The translations under genes and the position numbers were made by a program. From Octopus bimaculoides (Eukaryota): 64,000 nucleotides of DNA. The stretch covers positions 109,648,523 to 109,712,522 of the forward strand of contig NC_068986.1 of NCBI RefSeq assembly GCF_001194135.2, written 5' to 3'. The notes under the pieces are model-generated. The model was not told where the DNA came from, ran no database searches, and worked only from the letters and a program-made list of their open reading frames with translations. Shown here piece by piece: positions 3,367 to 58,990 of the stretch (position 1 is the stretch's first letter; each line of letters opens with the position of its first letter).

Positions 3367-3762
3367 GGCGCAGGAGTGGCTATGTGTAAGTAGCTTGCTT
3401 ACCAACCACATGGTTCCAGGTCCAGTCCCACTGCGTGGCATCTTGGGCAAGTGTCTTCTACTATAACCACGGGCCGACCAAAGCCTAATGAGTGGATTTG
3501 GTAGATGGAAACTGAAAGAAGCCCGTCGTATATATGTATATATATATGTGTGTGTGTGTGTGTTTGTGTTTGTCCCCCTAACATTGCTTGACAACCGATG
3601 CTGGTGTGTTTATGTCACCGTCACTTAGCGATTCGGCAAAAGAGACCGATAGAATAAGTACTTGGCTTACAAAGAATAAGTTCCGGGGTCGATTTGCTTG
3701 ACTAAGGGTGGTGCTCCAGCATGGCCAGTCAAATGACTGAAACAAGTAAAAGAATAAAAGAA
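3367..3762 (+). mobile_element. tRNA-derived SINE, family A (CORE-like), full length
   Basis: A/B-box-like head (tggctgtgtggtaag...ggttccaggtcc), gcatcttgggcaagtgtctt core, internal TA/TG microsatellite and a gactgaaacaagtaaaagaa tail; many copies in the window. Confidence 0.85.
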
Positions 3763-4173
3763 TCAAGTACTGGGGTCAATGTAAATGGCTAACCCTGCTC
3801 CCTCTAAAATTGCAGGCATTGTGCCCAAATTTGAAACCAATATTTCTTACCTCTACAACAGATTGGCAGAATTGTTACAGTGTTGGACAAAATGCCTTGT
3901 AGTATTTGTTCCAGCCACTTACATTCAGAGTTCAAATCATGTCTAAGTCACCGAAGCACAAGTATTGATTTTAATGTGCCATAGTTGTTGTTGTTTAGCT
4001 TCAAGAAAGCCCTAATTCAAGGAACCCATTCACAATATACAGTCACTAATCATTTTTATGAAGTTCAATCAAATATTCTCTGATCAGACTCGCTTTTTTT
4101 CTCCTGTCAATGATGGTTGGAATATATTTATGCAGACTTTTAGGGAGATTTGATGTGAAAAAGTTTAACAACA

Positions 4174-7673: not shown

Positions 7674-8296
7674 CTCATAACCTCCCCCACCTATACACAC
7701 ACACCCTTCTTTTTTTATCAGTCACAATGTATCTACGACTAGAACCTCCAATATTTCCTTCCTTTTGTAAGAAAAAGTAGGATATGATGAAGCGGTTTGG
7801 CTGGTATTTTTTTTTTCTCAGGACAAGTGACTATGAAAGATTACTTACTGGTTTGTTACGAACTCGATGCAGCTGCCCAAGAGATCAGAGAGGGAGGAGA
7901 AAGGGAAGTAAAAAGTTAATGGGGGGAGAGTATGAGGAAACTCTAATCTCCTCCAGATAATGCTGAAGTGTTCAATTCAAAAAAGTAACCCCATCAAAAA
8001 ATGACCCGAACAATTTTACGGTTGTTGTAGTTGATAGGAAACAACACAAACAAGAGTAACACCTGACTGCTATGTTTCTAAGATGAGATATTGCAAGATT
8101 AAGAAAGATTAAAAAGGCTTTTAACCTCATTCACCTTCATTCAGTATTATCATTTAATATAGAGCTTTTCTTGTTAACATCTGCACCTTTCCTGGGGTTA
8201 AAAGACGGGCTGGCCATGTCATATACACCTTAGATCATGTGTCTGCTCAATAATTGAAACAAACAATAAATCGTCAGAGACAACAGAGGCAAGTTC

Positions 8297-8601
8297 ATTT
8301 CACCCTTTTTGGACGGACTTGTGACTGGTGACGAAAAATGGATCATCTATCGAAATGTTAAACGTCGTAAATAGTGGCTTGGTAAAAGGGAAAAAGCTCA
8401 ACCACAACCGAGAAGGGAACTTCATGGGAAAAAGGTTCTTCTCTCTATCAGGTGGGATTGCAAAGGAGTAATTCACTTTGAATTGTTACCACCTAATGCA
8501 ACAATAATCAATGCTCAAGTCTACTGTCAGCAATTAGAGCGTTTGAACCAAGCTTTGAAGAAAAAAAGCCAGCTTTAGTGAATCGAAAAGGAGTTATGTT
8601 T
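8297..8601 (+). mobile_element. Mariner (DD34D-type) transposase pseudogene fragment, catalytic domain
   Basis: Translates PFLDGLVTGDEKWIIYRNVKRRK*WLGKREKAQPQPRRELHGKKVLLSIRWDCKGVIHFELLPPNATIINAQVYCQQLERLNQALKKK / PALVNRKGVMF. It has the TGDEKW motif, one stop and one frameshift, and is cut by the gap just before the expected HDNA motif. Confidence 0.9.
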
Positions 8602-9446
8602 NNNNNNNNNNNNNNNNNNNNNNNNNNNNNNNNNNNNNNNNNNNNNNNNNNNNNNNNNNNNNNNNNNNNNNNNNNNNNNNNNNNNNNNNNNNNNNNNNNN
8701 NNNNNNNNNNNNNNNNNNNNNNNNNNNNNNNNNNNNNNNNNNNNNNNNNNNNNNNNNNNNNNNNNNNNNNNNNNNNNNNNNNNNNNNNNNNNNNNNNNNN
8801 NNNNNNNNNNNNNNNNNNNNNNNNNNNNNNNNNNNNNNNNNNNNNNNNNNNNNNNNNNNNNNNNNNNNNNNNNNNNNNNNNNNNNNNNNNNNNNNNNNNN
8901 NNNNNNNNNNNNNNNNNNNNNNNNNNNNNNNNNNNNNNNNNNNNNNNNNNNNNNNNNNNNNNNNNNNNNNNNNNNNNNNNNNNNNNNNNNNNNNNNNNNN
9001 NNNNNNNNNNNNNNNNNNNNNNNNNNNNNNNNNNNNNNNNNNNNNNNNNNNNNNNNNNNNNNNNNNNNNNNNNNNNNNNNNNNNNNNNNNNNNNNNNNNN
9101 NNNNNNNNNNNNNNNNNNNNNNNNNNNNNNNNNNNNNNNNNNNNNNNNNNNNNNNNNNNNNNNNNNNNNNNNNNNNNNNNNNNNNNNNNNNNNNNNNNNN
9201 NNNNNNNNNNNNNNNNNNNNNNNNNNNNNNNNNNNNNNNNNNNNNNNNNNNNNNNNNNNNNNNNNNNNNNNNNNNNNNNNNNNNNNNNNNNNNNNNNNNN
9301 NNNNNNNNNNNNNNNNNNNNNNNNNNNNNNNNNNNNNNNNNNNNNNNNNNNNNNNNNNNNNNNNNNNNNNNNNNNNNNNNNNNNNNNNNNNNNNNNNNNN
9401 NNNNNNNNNNNNNNNNNNNNNNNNNNNNNNNNNNNNNNNNNNNNNN
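8602..9446. other. Assembly gap
   Basis: N run. Confidence 1.
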
Positions 9447-9551
9447 AAGTATTCAGTTGTTTACATTTACTCCTTTGGCTGATTAAGCGATGTAAAGCGT
9501 ATTTAATCTCCATACCTTCGTTTTATTTGCTTTTTTCATTTTAAATTTGCT

Positions 9552-9579
9552 TTAACCCTAACCCTAGGGTTAGGGTTAA
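9552..9579. repeat. Perfect 28-bp palindrome of telomere-type units
   Basis: ttaaccctaaccctagggttagggttaa equals its own reverse complement. Confidence 0.95.
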
Positions 9580-9986
9580 TTGTTTCAGAATCGTTTGTTT
9601 ATGTAGTCGGCACTTAATGTATATCAGCTGAATGGACGTCAGTGATTGGTTGAAATTACAGAAATACGACAACTTTCACATGGAATAACTTATGGATTTC
9701 TTTTTTTTTTAAGAAGACTAAGAGAAAAGGATGTTTTATATGACACATTCTACCAGTGTTCCAAGTTTCAAAGTGTTTCGTTAATGAAAAATGTGGCCCC
9801 CGTTTTAAAAAAGATCCGACTCCTCTGTTTAGTTCCTGCTATTATCAGGTTATTCTTTCGTCTCTCTGACTTGTTTCCCATTTTCAACTGCAGCTGAGAT
9901 TTCCCATTTTCTGCTGCAGCTGAGATGTATTAGAAAGATTAGGCCTCTAACGAAATACATTTTTTCAAACATTTTTTACTATACTA

Positions 9987-10383
9987 TAGGTGCAGGAGTG
10001 GCTGTGTGGTAAGTAGCTTGCTTACCAGTCACATGGTTCCGGGTTCAGTCCCACTGCGTGGCACCTTGGGCAAGTGTCTTCTACTATAGCCTTGGGCTGA
10101 CCAAAGCCTTGTGAGTGGATTTGGTAGATGGAAACTGAAAGAAGCCCGTCGAGTATGTGTGTGTGTATATATATATGTGTGTCTGTGTTTGTCCCCTCAA
10201 CATCTCTTGACAACCGATGCTGGTGTGTTTACGTCCCCGTAACTTAGTGGTTCGGCAAAAGAAACCGATAGAATAAGTAGTAGGCTTACAAAGAATAAGT
10301 TCTGGGGTCGATTTGCTCGACTAAAGGCAGTGCTCCAGCATGGCCGCAGTCAAATGACTGAAACAAATAAAAGAATAAAAGAA
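9987..10383 (+). mobile_element. SINE family A, full length
   Basis: Head taggtgcaggagtggctgtgtgg through tail aaagaataaaagaa. Confidence 0.85.
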
Positions 10384-10561
10384 TATATATTTTACTAGTT
10401 TTTCTTTCTTTTCCTTTTTTCTTGAGGATGGGTGGTGGGGGGATATTATGCATTTTTCTAAACAACATCGTCTTTGGTTGGAGGCTTCCAAGTAGCCTAA
10501 TACTGATGCAATCCATTTCCAATGGTGAGAGTGACAAAAGTATGTCTATGCATCTTGGGTA

Positions 10562-12736
10562 GAGTAAACACCACAAGGTATTTTCATTCATCGCAGCAGT
10601 TGATCAGCAATTTCTCATCAATGACAAGAATGTCCTCGGTGACTTGACATGGAAAGAACCAGAACGTCTCCCCCCACCCATATCCCTTGCTAGTAGAATC
10701 AGACTGTGCTTTCATTAACATCATTATGACAAGCCTCATTAAACAACAGCCAGTAATACAACATCATCATCAGCAGCAGCATAAACTGATGAGACTACTA
10801 CACTACTACTATTATTATTATCAACACAGCTGTAAAATGTCTCTTCAAACAAACCCCTGCCACTTCAAGTGGGGGCTGATCAGTTTATTTCAACTGTTAA
10901 TCCCTAGAAATAACATTCTTTCAAAACACAGAATGGATTTGTCAAAGAAACAAAAGTAAACAAGACGAAGCTTTGATAAAACTTTGACCAGATACAACAT
11001 TAGATTTATCTAATTATTTTTATATTGCAATTTGGAAATAATAATAACATTAAATGCATGTTCTTGAATGGACGGCCACCTGTTAATTAGATTTTCAATG
11101 GTGAAAGTGATGGGGGGAAGTGCTTGAATTTTAGCATTTCCAAAGCACTGGTTTCTTGTTTTCACACACACACACATGCATGCATGCGCACGTGCATGTG
11201 AGGGCTGATCAATAAGTATCTGGACTGTGGCCATAGTAACAAAGCTAAAGCAAGCAGAGTGAAGCCACTTGGCACAGACTGACCTTGAACTCTGCTGTGC
11301 ATATGCACTAAGTTTTAACGTTCTAGCTCACTTCTGCTGTTTACAGCAGTGCTTGGAAGGAAGGTGTGTAGCGTGTGTTCATCTCATTGACCATGACAGA
11401 AAGTTGAGCACAGAATCTGCATCAAATTTTACCAAAAGCTTGGTGGTACCTGCTCAGAGGCCTACGCAAAGTTTTCATAAAGTTTTCATTGGTCTCGACA
11501 CAATCAAGGAGATCTTTTATGCAACTGAAACCCAAGTGTCCTTTTCATCAGCTGAAAGCAATTTCGGCACAAACTTGGCAGACAAGTGTCTCAACCCAAA
11601 TCTTCAGTGATAATGGACTGAACTGAACCGTAATTAATCTGCACATCTTCTGATAACTCACAGATGGTGATTCGATGATTCCCCCTCACAGTTGTATGCA
11701 CATCTGTGATGTTTTTCTCAGTTCTGTTGGTTGTGGGTCTCCCAGAACATTCGTCAATATCAACATTTTTTCAGCCATCTTGGAAACGTTTGAACCACTT
11801 GTACACTTGTGTGCAGCTCATACACTCCTCTCCATACACTTTATGCAACTTTGCATAGGCCACTGAGCAGGTATCGCCATGACAGCTTTCTCTGTCGTGG
11901 TCAATGCGATGATCACACGCTACACACCTTCCTTCCAAGCAGTGCTGTAAACAGCAAAAGTGAGCCAGAAACTTAGTGCGCATGCACAGCAGAGTCCAAG
12001 GTCAATCTGTGCCAAGCAGCTTCACTCTGCGTGCTTTAGCTTTGTTACTATGGCAACAGTCTGGATACTTATTGATCAGCCCTCGTATGGTTCAAACATA
12101 CAAAAAACAGAAGACAGGTGAGTGAACAACAAACAAGTTTGGCATAAAAACCAATGGATTTGGAATGGTGTCTCTTGACATACACCAATTTGAGAGCCTT
12201 CCCTACCACTCTTGCCATTGAAAATCTAATTAACCAGTGATGATCCGTTCAAGAACATGCATTTAATGTCGTTATTATTCCCAAATTGCAATATAAAAAA
12301 TAACTCAAACTTTATCAAACAGTCTCTTGTTTATTTTTTGTTTCTTTAACAAATCCATTTGTGTTTTAAATGTTATTTCTAGGGATTAACAGTTGAAATA
12401 AACTGAGCAGCCCCCACTTGAAGTGGCAGGGGTTTGTTTGAAGAGACACTTTACAGCTGCGTTAATAATAATGATAATAATAATAGCAGCAGCAGCAGCA
12501 GTGGTAGTAGTAGTAGTCTCATCAATTTATGCTGATGACAATGATGATGTATTACTGGCTGTTGTTTAATGAGGTTTGTCATAATGAAAGTACAGTGTGA
12601 CTCTACTAGCAAGGGATATGGGGTGGGGAGGTGTTCTGGTTCTTTCCAAGTCAAGTCAGTGAGGACATTTTTGTTAATGGTGAGAAATTGCTGATCAATT
12701 GGTCAGTTGAATGAAAATACCTTGTGGTGTTTACTC
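10562..12736. repeat. Large nested inverted duplication (outer arms about 10562-11157 and 12145-12736)
   Basis: Colinear reverse-complement similarity over about 590 bp, e.g. exact 35-mer 10883-10917 versus 12369-12403, with matching ends gagtaaacaccacaaggtattttcattca / tgaatgaaaataccttgtggtgtttactc. Confidence 0.9.
11199..12085 (-). mobile_element. Mariner-derived element with two inverted 5' ends and a transposase N-terminal pseudogene
   Basis: Both ends read (ta/tg)(c/t)gagggctgatcaataagtatc. The minus strand encodes DTCSVAYAKLHKVYGEECMSCTQVYKWFKRFQDG*KNVDIDECSGRPTTNRTEKNITDVH...ITICELSEDVQINYGSVQSIITEDLG*...AKFVPKLLSADEKD, i.e. HTH motifs and a WVPHEL-equivalent linker. Confidence 0.9.
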
Positions 12737-12962
12737 AATGACTATGCTCTGGTCTAGACTATAATCAGCTATAAAATAGTCAGCTATTGTCACTGTGGTG
12801 GTGGTGGTGGTGGTGGTGGTATACACCTACACACAGGTAACCAGTTAAATGTTTAGAAAGGTACCTGGATCTTACACCTTGGATATATACTGTAGACAAA
12901 TGACAGAGCTGCTACAAGGCAGGTGTCAACCAGCTTAGAAATAACAGCCAAATTTACTTGAA

Positions 12963-13236
12963 ATTATGCTAGTGCCCCCTCCCACTGGCTCCTGTGCCCA
13001 TGGCATATAAAAAGCACCATCTGAATGTGGTTGATGCCAGTGCCGCCTGACTGGCTCCCATGCCGGTGGCACGTAAAAAGCACCCACTTCACTCTCAGAG
13101 TGGTTGGTGCTAGGAAGGGCATCCAGCTGTAGAAACCTTGCCAGATCAGATTGGGGCCTGGTGCAGCTTCCTGGCTTGCCAGCCCCCAATCAAACTGTCC
13201 AACCCATGCCAGCATGGAAAACAGACGTTAAACGAT
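12963..13236 (+). mobile_element. Family C repeat (RTE LINE 3' UTR-derived)
   Basis: tgccggtggcacgtaaaaagcaccc...ggaagggcatccagctgtagaaac...ccaacccatgccagcatggaaaacagacgttaaacgat. Confidence 0.8.
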
Positions 13237-14371
13237 GTAATGGTGATGATCTTAAAAAAAATGAATGAAACATTAGGTAACGTGATTTAGAATGTTCTGA
13301 AACTGAATAAAATACAGGATGGTCATATCTGGAATAATTTTGATAATAGAACTGCTCAATCAGAGTCGACCTTGTGTGAGGTTGGGTTTGGTTCTGTTTT
13401 GTTATGACAGAATAATCTAGGAATTGTCTGAATCCACAGACAGATCTACAAATCACAATCAACACCAAAGTCTAATGTTTTGATAAAATAAGGAATGACA
13501 AACCAGAACCAAGATATCTTTGAATTCTATGTTCACAATTGCCATCGACTTCACCATTTACAGAGTTTTTCTTTTTGTATTTCTCTAAATTTGTATTTTG
13601 GACATTGTGAGTGAAAACCCAAATTTTTATCTAAGTTTCTCACCCACACGACTGGACATGGTTCAGCTCTTAGAAAGATAAATTATTTTAAAGAATTAAC
13701 ATTTTTCATCCTCAAATGTGATTTTACATTTTTTAAAATTAAAGATTTTTTAGAGGTGTGGGGCACGGATATGGGAGGGGACTCCTGTTTTTAAGTGTTG
13801 TTGTTACTGTTTTTATTAACACCGAGTCAGCTTTTATTGAACAAATTTCTCATCAATGGTGTTCCAAATATGACCCTCTTGTCTTTTTGTATATCTAATA
13901 TCCAGGATTACATTCTGTAAATTGTCCTTCTTCTTTTGTTTAAGATGGTTAGGGTGGGGAGGGGGACATAGGTGGAGGGGGACAGAGAAGCAGGGAAAGA
14001 GGAGGAGGGACAAACGAGGGGAGGGGGAGAGGAGGAGGAGGAGGAGGTAAAGTGTTTATGGAAGAGTTGAAATTTTGCAAAGACAGGTGTTCAATGGAAC
14101 ATTAAAAATCGTTTTAATGTTTCTAAATTTTATCAACATAATTGTCTTCTTAAATTTACTTTGTATCAAACTTTATTTTAAAATAATAAGTATTTTTCTT
14201 TCGAAAATTAGTAATTCATTTCATCATTTTGTATGAACACCAAGAAACAGGATAAAAACTAACTAACTGTAACATCTGCCATATTTCCTGATAATAACCA
14301 TGGTGGTAAAAGTATACTTCCAAAGTTAGCCATTCTAAGTAATTATCCTCACCACCACCACCACCACCACC

Positions 14372-56860: not shown

Positions 56861-56871
56861 ATATTATATTA

Positions 56872-57045
56872 TAGGTGCAGGAGTGGCTGGGTGGTAAGTA
56901 GCTTGCTTACCAACCGCATGGTTCGGGTTCAGTCCCACTGCGTGGCACCTTGGGCAAGTGTCTTCTGCTATAGCCTCGGGCCAACCAAAGCCTTTTGAGT
57001 GGATTTGGTAGACGGAAACTGAAAGAAGCCCGTCGTGTATATGTG

Positions 57046-57110
<65 letters not shown>

Positions 57111-57328
57111 TTATTTGTCTGTGTTTGTCCCCCCCCACCCCACCAACATCACTTGACAACTGATACTGATGTGTTTACATCCCTGTAACTTAGTGGTTCA
57201 GCAAAAGAGACCGATAGAATAAGTACTAGGCTTACAAAGAATAAGTCATGTGGTCGATTTTCTCGACTAAAGGCGGTGCCCCAGCATGGCCACAGTCAAA
57301 TGACTGAAACAAGTAAGAGTAAAAGAGA
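56872..57328 (+). mobile_element. SINE family A, full length
   Basis: Head to tail, with an expanded internal TA/TG run. Confidence 0.85.
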
Positions 57329-58689
57329 GTTATTATTACTATTATTATTTGCCATCGTCAGCTTTGCCTTTCATCCTTTCGGGGTTGATGAATTAAGTAC
57401 CAGTGAGACACTGGGGTCAATGTAATTGACTCATCCCCTCCCCCAAAATGGCTGCCCTTGTGGCAAAATCTGAAACCATTATTATTATTATTATTATCAT
57501 TAGATGTTGAAACCAAGAGAACAATGTAACTAAACTCCTATTTAAAAATGAATTTTCAACAGGATTATTGAATAAAAAGAATTTTTCTTGTTTCTTGTTT
57601 TTTTTTCCCATTAACTAAAGGTTTTCAAATAAACAATCACCCTAATTCCCAGGGTGTAAAAAAGGTTTGTCTTTAGACATTTTATTGTGAACAGATATTA
57701 TTGCAAACATCCATTTCTCTGTTTATTATTCGGAGTTCAATTATAACTACCTCTGTTGTGGAGGAGGAAGGTACTAAGCACAATTCTTCGTAACAATGAC
57801 TGCCCCCACCACAATTTTCTGCAGAGAAACAGTTAAAAAAAAAAGAAGCCTAATAATTATGCTGTTTCAAATAATAACAAAAACAATATTTGGTTCCTAC
57901 ATAAAAATAAACAAAGAACAATAGACATCTTACACCAATATGCTTGATATAATGTTGGTCAATAATTTGCCAGTCCTGGGTCGATAAAAATATATTTTGG
58001 ACTTTTATGGAATGTGGGTCAACAACAGTTATTGTTTATTTTTGCTGCTGTTGTTTTCGGCCAGCCATGACAAATAACCAAAGGCATTCCAACCATACCC
58101 AACTTGTTTATTCATCCAGTTTATCTCAGGCTGTGTTTACATTATATGTTGTGACCATGTATGTAGGCATCGAGCTGGCAGAACTGTTAGCAGGCTGCGC
58201 AATATGCTTAGCAGTAATTCATCCGTCTTTATGTTCCAAGTTCAAATTCTGCTGAGGTTAACTTTGCTTTTCATCCTTTTGGGGTCAATAAAATAAATAC
58301 CAGTTGAACACTGGGGGTCGGTGTAATCAACTACTCCTGGGTAAGAGCATAAGAATCTAACCCTTCTGCCAAGCCATGTCAAGCCAGTATCATAGAACAG
58401 GGTCATCAAACCAGTCTGATCTCAAATTTATGGCCTTCACTTCAGACCATGGTTGGTGGAGAGAGAATGCTGAGGGCCTTCGTCCTGCAGTGAACATTGG
58501 CAACCCAATCCAACATGTATTTAATGGGTTTTAGAATAGGGACTCTGTGTCATTGCATGCTGTAAGTGGCAGTAAAATTGGGGAGCAACACAAAGGGCAT
58601 TTGGCTGTGAAAATACTGCCTCACAAAAACACCATCTAACTTGTACCAGTTTGAAAAAGTGGACATTCAACACTGGTGATGATGACGAT

Positions 58690-58990
58690 AATGATGATGG
58701 TGCCACTGCACTGGCTCCCGTGCAGGTGGCATGTAAAAGACACCATTTTGAGTGTGGCTGTTGCCAGTACCGCCTGACTGGCTTTCGTGCCGGCGGCACG
58801 TAAAAGCACCCACTACACTCTCAGAGTGGTTGGTGTTAGGAAGGGCATCCAGCTGTAGAAACTCTGCCAGATCAGATTGCAGATTGGGGCCTGGTGTAAC
58901 CACATGGTTCACCAGTCCTCAGTCAAATCATCCAACCCATGCTAGCATGGAATGCGGACGTTAAACGATGATGATGATGATGATGATGAT
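58690..58990 (+). mobile_element. Family C repeat with a (GAT)n tail
   Basis: ccggcggcacgtaaaagcacccactacactctcagagtgg...gcggacgttaaacgatgatg. Confidence 0.85.

What the first reader, a model, noticed from the sequence alone, without database searches (positions are those of the whole stretch)
10562..12736. Nested 2.2-kb foldback: a ~590-bp inverted duplication wrapped around a mariner with two 5' ends
Seen: the outer arms (about 10562-11157 and 12145-12736) are colinear reverse complements of sequence not found elsewhere in this window, including a shared but diverged CAT/CAG/TAT microsatellite. The inner arms (about 11199-11480 and 11839-12085) are both the 5' end of the same mariner. Inference: one foldback or template-switch event begun inside the mariner copied its 5' end and flank back in inverted orientation. 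The divergence between arms argues against an assembly artefact. If transcribed, it would give about 850 bp of imperfect dsRNA, a candidate ADAR or endo-siRNA substrate. Caveat: the ~40-60 bp immediately outside the two mariner ends do not match each other.
Basis: partly seen in the sequence, partly recalled or inferred. Interest (0 to 1): 0.72.

Follow-up and report, generated by a model that had tools for sequence, protein, structure and literature searches.

The report
Decayed palindrome centred on rearranged mariner
A dead mariner transposon fragment with two copies of its own front end sits exactly in the middle of a 600-bp inverted duplication of host DNA; it is probably a scar of fold-back DNA repair and an instructive but ordinary kind of structure.

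Summary
Two concentric inverted repeats lie at 10562-12736. The outer arms are 10562-11169 and 12118-12736. The inner arms are 11199-11483 and 11838-12085, separated by a 354-nt single-copy spacer.

The inner 887-bp unit is a truncated mariner on the minus strand. It has a terminal inverted repeat, a Mos1-type HTH_48 domain (E=8e-8) and no catalytic domain. Its far end is an inverted copy of its own first ~285 bp. The join lies in a 13-nt zone of inverted microhomology.

Inner and outer arm pairs are equally diverged (9.8% against 9.5%, Fisher p=0.90).

Symmetry breaks exactly at the transposon ends. About 25-29 nt on the left (a pure pyrimidine-purine microsatellite) and 28 nt on the right share no similarity. 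A single continuous fold-back does not predict this.

My best reading (about 0.42) is two linked steps. A hairpin mariner formed first by template switching. Its arms then nucleated a fold-back or template switch that copied ~610 bp of one flank.

The main rival (about 0.30) is an unrelated insertion of the hairpin mariner into the loop of an older palindrome.

Genome-wide copy number, reads and expression could not be checked. Interest is low to moderate.

The parts
10562..11169 (.). Outer left arm: inverted duplicate of 12118-12736, host (non-mariner) sequence with no copy elsewhere in the window
   Evidence: 9.5% substitutions, 18 gap openings; no other copy in the window.
11163..11200 (.). 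Perfectly alternating pyrimidine-purine tract, (CA)7 then a CATG/CG/TG compound microsatellite. Positions 11170-11194 form the left unmatched patch.
   Evidence: Y/R string; no similarity to the right patch beyond shuffles.
11197..11198 (.). TG, the counterpart of the TA target-site dinucleotide at the left mariner end (one transition away from TA)
   Evidence: (pair I1).
11199..12085 (-). 887-bp non-autonomous mariner derivative with two 5' ends. It is colinear with the mariner from 12085 down to 11471 (element positions 1 to ~615) and is then an inverted copy of positions 1 to ~285.
   Evidence: HTH_48; best relatives 65-69% aa, Mos1-HTH proteins.
11199..11483 (+). Inner left arm: second, inverted copy of the mariner 5' terminus, 5' UTR and first ~25 codons. 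It retains 31 nt that the right arm has lost.
11471..11483 (.). Junction zone GTTTTCATAAAGT, which aligns to both partners (inverted microhomology). It lies within a perfect 11-nt tandem repeat at 11468-11489.
11484..11837 (-). Single-copy spacer (354 nt): mariner transposase N-terminal coding region (about residues 25-125, with stops and a frameshift)
11838..12085 (-). Inner right arm: the 5' end of the mariner that is colinear with the spacer
12086..12087 (.). TA dinucleotide flanking the mariner terminus
12090..12117 (.). Right unmatched patch (28 nt)
12118..12736 (.). Outer right arm. It begins with GTGAGTGA, the complement of TCAC(T)CAC, which faces TCAC(A)CAC at 11162-11169.

Best explanation
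This is a decayed, non-functional scar made in two causally linked steps.

Step 1. A mariner inserted at a TA inside a (CA/TG)n-type microsatellite. It was then converted to an 887-bp 'hairpin' derivative. During repair synthesis the nascent strand, having copied element positions 1 to ~615, switched at a 13-nt inverted microhomology. From there it copied positions ~250 back to 1 of the same end. This left a 354-nt spacer between two 285-bp arms.

Step 2. A break or stalled fork arose beside this inverted repeat, plausibly in the fragile alternating Py-Pu tract. The single strand folded back on the mariner arms. The ~28-nt non-homologous original flanks stayed as a symmetric bubble. The 3' end annealed at the 7-of-8 microhomology TCAC(A/T)CAC. 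Synthesis then copied ~610 nt of the opposite flank in inverted orientation, and the end was rejoined at 10561/10562 or 12736/12737. Heteroduplex repair in the folded intermediate, or closeness in time, set both arm pairs to the same starting identity. They have since drifted together to about 10% divergence.

Shown: the anatomy, the mariner identity, the junction microhomology, the equal divergence, the unmatched patches, and the absence of target-site duplications at the outer ends.

Inferred: the order of events, the break, the fold-back nucleation, the retained bubble and the heteroduplex reset.
For: - Junction inside the mariner lies at an inverted microhomology, defined with two outgroup mariners.
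- A Tc1/mariner MITE with both halves derived from one end and inverted microhomology at the join has been described and explained by template switching in gap repair (Goblin from Ozma, PMC3814204). A relative of this mariner (L001) carries its own internal palindrome.
- Inner and outer arms have 24/245 and 49/516 substitutions, Fisher p=0.90. Derived changes in the inner arms are split 9 right to 8 left.
- Symmetry stops exactly at the transposon ends plus 2 nt and resumes after 25-29 nt and 28 nt, nearly equidistant on both sides. This is expected if these patches are the original flanks held opposite each other by the paired mariner arms.
- Outer-arm homology starts at TCAC(A)CAC against TCAC(T)CAC, at the edge of the (CA)n run.
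- There is no target-site duplication and no significant inverted similarity beyond 10562 and 12736. No copy of either arm occurs elsewhere in the window.
- Fold-back priming at natural inverted repeats near a double-strand break, with heterologous flaps and mismatch correction in the foldback, is experimentally established in yeast (PMC10622511). Spacer plus inverted microhomology is the hallmark of human germline inverted duplications (PMC3907307).
Against: - In the documented pathway the heterologous flap is trimmed and synthesis starts at the base of the repeat. That would make the flank symmetric right from the transposon end. A retained 28-nt bubble is my own extension and is undocumented.
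- The order of events cannot be read from one sequence.
- Equal divergence needs either a heteroduplex reset or two events close in time.
- The 7-of-8 microhomology at the arm/patch boundary is simply where homology ends and would look the same under the rivals.
- No genome-wide copy data, no orthologous locus and no reads were available.
Confidence: 0.42

Rival explanations
1. Independent nested insertion. A ~1.26-kb palindrome already existed, either an old inverted duplication or a hairpin-type non-autonomous element, with ~600-bp arms and a ~60-nt loop. A mobile (or later rearranged in situ) hairpin mariner landed by chance at the TA in the middle of the loop.
For: - The break of symmetry coincides with the transposon termini. 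TA (or TG) flanks both ends, which is the classical insertion signature.
- The reconstructed empty site ...GTGCA-TA-TGG... lies in an alternating Py-Pu context. From my memory of the Tc1 target consensus CAYATATRTG (papers citing the motif were listed), Tc1-type elements favour such sites.
- Same-end hairpin derivatives of Tc1/mariner are known as mobile families.
- Nested transposon insertions are common in repeat-rich genomes such as this one.
Against: - Only 2 of 85 TA sites of the reconstructed palindrome lie in the loop.
- Equal divergence of two unrelated repeat pairs (p=0.90) would be a coincidence.
- The outer element has no target-site duplication (best case 4 of 8 nt).
- The outer arms contain no tandem subrepeats beyond short microsatellites.
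- There is no other copy in the window.
- Two independent inverted-repeat-forming events would have to share one centre.
Confidence: 0.3
2. One fold-back begun inside an ordinary mariner copied positions ~250 to 1 plus ~640 nt of flank in one go. Later the ~28 nt next to the left end were deleted and a Py-Pu microsatellite grew in their place.
For: - Equal divergence and a balanced split of derived changes.
- One junction with microhomology.
- No outer target-site duplication.
- The arms have suffered many other indels of up to 31 nt.
- Py-Pu tracts of 24 nt or more cover 3.6% of this window, so such tracts arise often here.
- The only CA in the right-arm counterpart of the patch is the one next to the TA. 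A slippage deletion from a (CA)n run would therefore end exactly there (read).
Against: - It needs a deletion plus a microsatellite birth whose edge falls within 2 nt of the transposon end.
- The replaced length (25-29 nt) must happen to equal the lost 28 nt.
- No residual similarity is left.
Confidence: 0.15
3. The whole 2.2 kb is one copy of a composite long-terminal-repeat mobile element, of foldback or FB-NOF type, or a very-long-TIR Tc1/mariner.
For: - Long inverted arms surround a transposon-derived core.
- The left outer end reads TAGAG, resembling the hAT terminal motif as I recall it.
Against: - No target-site duplication of 2, 3, 4 or 8 bp.
- No tandem subrepeats beyond short microsatellites in the arms.
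- No second copy in 59.5 kb of non-gap sequence.
- No related ORF in 1.84 billion representative proteins.
Confidence: 0.05
4. Assembly artefact: a chimeric fold-back join in a gapped short-read scaffold.
For: The window is a scaffold with 9 gaps totalling 4513 N.
Against: - The region 10562-12736 contains no N.
- The arms differ by about 10% substitutions and more than 20 indels. Fold-back chimeras give identical arms.
Confidence: 0.03

Closest known systems
Goblin MITE derived from the Tc1/mariner element Ozma in Aedes aegypti (PMC3814204)
   Same: Both sides of the internal junction derive from the same end of the parent element in inverted orientation. The break points are inverted microhomologies. 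The proposed origin is a template switch during gap-repair synthesis.
   Different: - This unit is 887 bp and keeps a 354-nt coding spacer.
- Its copy number and mobility are unknown.
- It is wrapped in an inverted duplication of host flank.
Fold-back inverted duplications with a single-copy spacer (human germline, PMC3907307; yeast break-induced, PMC10622511)
   Same: Inverted arms, a non-duplicated spacer and short inverted (micro)homology at the spacer/arm boundary. They can be nucleated by pre-existing inverted repeats such as Alu or LINE pairs.
   Different: - Those are kb-to-Mb terminal events with dicentric intermediates.
- This one is a 2.2-kb interstitial structure rejoined on both sides, old (about 10% diverged), and interrupted by a symmetric ~28-nt unmatched patch on each arm.
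Palindromic Tc1-related elements of C. elegans: Tc7, and the transposon-related palindromic repeat of Dreyfus and Emmons 1991
   Same: Elements that are mostly two long inverted arms whose tips match a Tc1/mariner terminus. Tc7 is from my memory. The 1991 paper appears in the reference list seen.
   Different: Those are multi-copy mobile families. Multi-copy status is untested here.
Drosophila foldback (FB) and FB-NOF elements
   Same: Long inverted arms with another element sitting in the centre (from memory).
   Different: FB arms are built of tandem subrepeats and have target-site duplications. Neither feature is found here.
Hairpin-RNA (hpRNA) endo-siRNA loci and ADAR-edited inverted repeats
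   Same: If transcribed, the locus would fold into a ~720-bp imperfect duplex.
   Different: - No evidence of transcription, small RNAs or editing could be obtained.
- No Rfam family matches.

Membership tests
mariner (IS630-Tc1-mariner superfamily) | Transposase with an N-terminal Mos1-type HTH | tested here: met
   Pfam HTH_48 at E=7.8e-8, 32.8 bits against a cut-off of 24.1. The best protein relatives all carry PF17906.
mariner (IS630-Tc1-mariner superfamily) | DD(34)D catalytic domain | tested here: not met
   The element stops at about residue 125. tblastn with the middle and C-terminal parts of a relative finds nothing within 11199-12085. It is therefore a non-autonomous remnant.
mariner (IS630-Tc1-mariner superfamily) | Short terminal inverted repeats flanked by a TA duplication | tested here: met
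   The termini CGAGGGCTGATCAATAAGTATC and TGAGGGCTGATCAATAAGTATC align with the 5' terminus of L002. TA lies at 12086-87 and TG (one transition from TA) at 11197-98.
Same-end hairpin MITE (Goblin type) | Both subterminal regions come from one end of the parent, joined at inverted microhomology | tested here: met
Same-end hairpin MITE (Goblin type) | Multi-copy family with copies in different flanks | not testable with these tools
   - No copy elsewhere in the window.
- The junction 23-mer is absent from metagenome contigs.
- The junction-spanning ORF has no homologue.
- The host genome was not searchable.
Fold-back inverted duplication | Inverted arms separated by a single-copy spacer, with inverted microhomology at the spacer boundary | tested here: met
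   The spacer is 11484-11837. The 13-nt overlap zone is 11471-11483.
Fold-back inverted duplication | Arms continuous over the whole duplicated interval | tested here: not met
   Patches of 25-29 nt and 28 nt have no similarity, and they begin exactly outside the mariner ends.
Foldback or long-TIR transposon (for the outer arms) | Target-site duplication at the outer ends | tested here: not met
   The flanks are ...CTTGGGTA and AATGACTA.... Duplications of 2, 3 and 4 bp are absent, and the 8-bp comparison matches 4 of 8.
Foldback or long-TIR transposon (for the outer arms) | Arms built of tandem subrepeats (FB type) | tested here: not met
   TRF finds only short microsatellites.
Foldback or long-TIR transposon (for the outer arms) | Multiple genomic copies | not testable with these tools
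   - None in the window.
- No hits for a 21-mer in metagenome contigs.
- No hits for the arm ORF in 1.84 billion proteins.
- These collections probably do not hold the host genome.
hpRNA / ADAR substrate | Transcription through both arms, small RNAs or A-to-G edits | not testable with these tools
Only the in-silico fold is available.

The most novel reading that the evidence does not exclude
A transposon-derived hairpin acted as the seed for growth of a larger palindrome in a germline. The mariner's own 285-bp inverted arms nucleated a fold-back that palindromised ~610 bp of host flank and left the original ~28-nt flanks as a symmetric bubble. That would be a fixed, natural example of inverted-repeat-nucleated fold-back duplication with a retained heterologous tail. 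It would also be a possible way for transposon remnants to create long-hairpin loci that could later feed siRNA or ADAR pathways.
Probability: 0.4. Interest if true: 0.45.

Novelty: new member of a known kind. Interest (0 to 1): 0.3.

Why it matters
If the linked-origin reading holds, the locus is a small, sequence-resolved germline example of a process mostly studied in yeast and in cancer or patient genomes. In that process an inverted repeat, here made by a transposon rearrangement, captures a nearby break and enlarges itself into a bigger palindrome. It would show one route by which dead DNA transposons generate long hairpin-forming loci.

If the nested-insertion reading holds, it is ordinary transposon layering.

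In either case the structure is old (about 10% arm divergence), encodes nothing intact, and has no demonstrated function.

Tried and rejected
No run ids could therefore be obtained, and read laying, copy-number, long-read and RNA checks were not done. I did not try to get round this.
- Exact-product look-ups of three window ORFs spanning the junction, the real N-terminus, and the TIR/patch/arm found nothing on record.
- The junction-spanning 113-aa ORF has no homologue.
- An exhaustive HMMER search of the outer-arm 90-aa ORF against 1.84 billion representatives gave 0 hits.
- Exact DNA scans gave 0 hits: an outer-arm 21-mer and the junction 23-mer in metagenome contigs, and the mariner terminus in viral contigs.
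- These negatives say little, because the host genome is evidently not represented in those collections. The closest mariner proteins are only 65-69% identical.
- Extension of the palindrome beyond 10562 and 12736 is not significant (293 of 1000 shuffles reach the score).
- Residual homology between the two unmatched patches: none.
- A mariner 3' half next to the structure: absent. The only other transposase signal, at ~8270-8601, belongs to a different mariner lineage on the other strand.
- Target-site duplications for the outer arms, including a hAT-like reading with TAGAG termini: none found.
- Rfam and tRNA scans of 9400-13800 were empty.
- The third protein-database search was not spent on identifying the host species. 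It would not change the verdict.

Full report
**What is there**

Reading 10300-13000 and the repeat search show a colinear series of inverted-repeat blocks. They fall into two concentric pairs.

Gapped alignment places the outer arms at 10562-11169 and 12118-12736. They have 49 substitutions in 516 aligned positions (9.5%) and 18 gap openings. They share a trinucleotide-repeat region that has expanded differently in the two arms.

The inner arms are 11199-11483 and 11838-12085. Between them lies 354 nt of single-copy sequence (11484-11837).

BLAST of the region against the whole window finds no other copy of either arm. This holds at word size 11 and at word size 7, where only microsatellite hits appear.

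The structure sits in locally unique DNA (10413-10561 and 12737-12961). That DNA lies between copies of two abundant short interspersed repeats, at 9971-10412 and 12962-13250.

The window is a gapped scaffold with 9 runs of N totalling 4513 nt. The region itself has no gap.

**The inner unit is a mariner remnant with two 5' ends**

On the minus strand, 12085 to about 11500 reads as a terminal inverted repeat, a 5' untranslated region and the first ~125 residues of a transposase. The coding part has two stops and a frameshift.

The translation hits Pfam HTH_48, the 'HTH domain in Mos1 transposase', at E=7.8e-8. The nearest database proteins are 65-69% identical Mos1-HTH proteins, including one from the snail Bradybaena similaris.

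I fetched two related contigs:
- L001, from a soil metagenome, is 73% identical in DNA and colinear with the element through about position 615. It also aligns in reverse to the far end of the unit.
- L002, a Logan contig, aligns from the very terminus.

L002 fixes the element ends at 11199 and 12085. TA lies at 12086-87. TG, one transition from TA, lies at 11197-98.

No catalytic domain is present. The unit is therefore a non-autonomous 887-bp derivative: positions 1 to ~615 followed by an inverted copy of positions ~285 to 1.

**The junction**

With the outgroups, window 11471-11483 (GTTTTCATAAAGT) aligns in two ways. It is the reverse complement of the colinear codons for ENFMKT (ACTTTATGAAAAC). 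It is also the left-arm copy of GTTGCATAAAGT, whose right-arm counterpart is at 11838-11849. TRF sees the resulting perfect 11-nt tandem repeat at 11468-11489.

The join therefore lies in an 8-13-nt imperfect inverted microhomology.

This anatomy has been described before. For the Aedes MITE Goblin, both halves derive from one end of the Tc1/mariner element Ozma and the break points carry inverted microhomology. The authors explain it by a template switch during gap-repair synthesis (PMC3814204).

The relative L001 carries an internal palindrome of its own at 995-1192. Such rearrangements therefore recur in this lineage.

Restricting to the element and using L002 and L001 to polarise changes, the inner arms differ at 24 of 245 positions (9.8%). 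Nine changes are derived on the right arm, eight on the left, and seven are ambiguous.

The outer arms differ at 9.5%. Fisher's exact test gives p=0.90. Indel density is somewhat lower in the inner arms, but not significantly so (P=0.05).

The 'clearly different divergence' outcome that would have refuted a common origin is not observed.

**What does not fit a single continuous fold-back**

Symmetry runs through the mariner termini, the TA and two more bases (CA at 11195-96, TG at 12088-89). It then disappears.

The left stretch, 11166/11170-11194, is part of a perfectly alternating pyrimidine-purine tract (11163-11200). The right stretch, 12090-12117, is unrelated. Their best alignment is no better than shuffled or random window sequence.

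Homology resumes at TCAC(A)CAC on the left and TCAC(T)CAC (read as the complement) on the right. It is gap-rich for about 60 nt and then good.

The patch lengths are nearly equal, 25-29 nt and 28 nt.

The outer ends show no target-site duplication. There is no significant inverted similarity beyond them, and there are no tandem subrepeats beyond short microsatellites.

**Weighing the models**

It also needs a later deletion plus a microsatellite birth whose edge falls within 2 nt of the transposon end and whose length happens to match the other side. Py-Pu tracts are common here, covering 3.6% of the window. The arms have many other indels. I therefore keep this model at 0.15.

*Independent nested insertion.* It explains the sharp boundary. 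Against it:
- Only 2 of 85 TA sites of the reconstructed palindrome lie in the loop.
- Equal divergence would be a coincidence.
- Two separate inverted-repeat-forming events would have to share one centre.
- The outer element lacks transposon hallmarks.

In its favour, an alternating Py-Pu context resembles the Tc1 target consensus. That point rests on my memory of the motif; papers citing it were listed. I give this model 0.30.

*Two linked steps.* This model keeps the good points of both. The hairpin mariner forms first, which accounts for the sharp boundary and the original non-homologous flanks. Its arms then nucleate a fold-back or microhomology-mediated template switch that copies the opposite flank. 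That accounts for the concentricity, the equidistant resumption of homology, the absence of outer duplications, and homology starting at a microhomology on the edge of a (CA)n run.

Supporting literature:
- Fold-back priming at natural inverted repeats next to a break is established in yeast (PMC10622511). That work describes heterologous flaps and mismatch correction in the foldback.
- Spacer plus inverted microhomology marks human germline inverted duplications. Some of those are nucleated by inverted Alu or LINE pairs (PMC3907307).
- Mismatch repair in the folded heteroduplex would also reset the inner arms. This would explain the equal divergence.

The weak point is that the documented pathway trims the flap. 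A retained 28-nt bubble is my own inference. I give this model 0.42.

*Composite mobile element (0.05) and assembly artefact (0.03).* Both are unlikely, for the reasons listed under the rival explanations.

**Function**

Nothing intact is encoded. There is no Rfam family and no tRNA.

Folded as one strand, 10562-12736 gives about 720 arm-to-arm pairs at -1240 to -1257 kcal/mol, against about -525 for shuffles. A transcript would therefore be a long imperfect hairpin.

**Limits**

The key question is the genome-wide copy number of the 887-bp unit and of the outer arm. It could not be answered. Database and collection searches were all empty. These are weak negatives, because the host genome is evidently not represented in those collections.

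**Verdict**

The template switch inside the mariner and the common age of both arm pairs hold up. The claim that one continuous event copied the end and the flank does not fit the patch that begins at the transposon termini.

The structure belongs to known kinds: a same-end hairpin mariner derivative combined with a fold-back-type inverted duplication.

Interest is low to moderate.

Noticed in passing
window 8270-8601 (+ strand), running into the N gap at 8602-9446: A fragment of a second, unrelated mariner-type transposase (Pfam Transposase_1, E=2e-24). It is only ~27% identical to the corresponding part of the L001 relative. It is therefore a different lineage from the element in the finding.
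   Followed up: partly
window 9971-10412 and about 10 further places (e.g. 3367-3763, 33442-33862, 56862-57350); 12962-13250 and about 10 further places (e.g. 23857-24135, 58690-58984): Two abundant short interspersed repeat families (75-90% identity between copies) flank the structure. At 46205-46852 a copy of the second family is nested inside a copy of the first.
   Followed up: partly
L001:995-1192: The soil-metagenome mariner most similar to this element has its own internal 78% palindrome inside the transposase gene, with the sequence in between deleted. This is another fold-back or template-switch derivative in the same lineage, or an assembly chimera.
   Followed up: partly
window 10515-10534, 11091-11110, and the reverse complement at 12206-12225: A 20-nt motif, ATTTYCAATGGTGARAGTGA, lies 28 nt outside the left end of the outer arm. 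It recurs near the inner end of the arms and occurs nowhere else in the window. Its significance is marginal (15 of 500 shuffles reach the score) and it is unexplained.
   Followed up: partly
window, whole: The window is a gapped scaffold with 9 runs of N totalling 4513 nt. It is very rich in CA/TA/TG-type microsatellites: 49 alternating Py-Pu tracts of 24 nt or more, covering 3.6% of the non-gap sequence.
   Followed up: no
window 12795-12820: A perfect (GTG)8.7 microsatellite lies 60 nt right of the outer arm. Similar tracts occur at 34643-34723 and 35074-35108.
   Followed up: no
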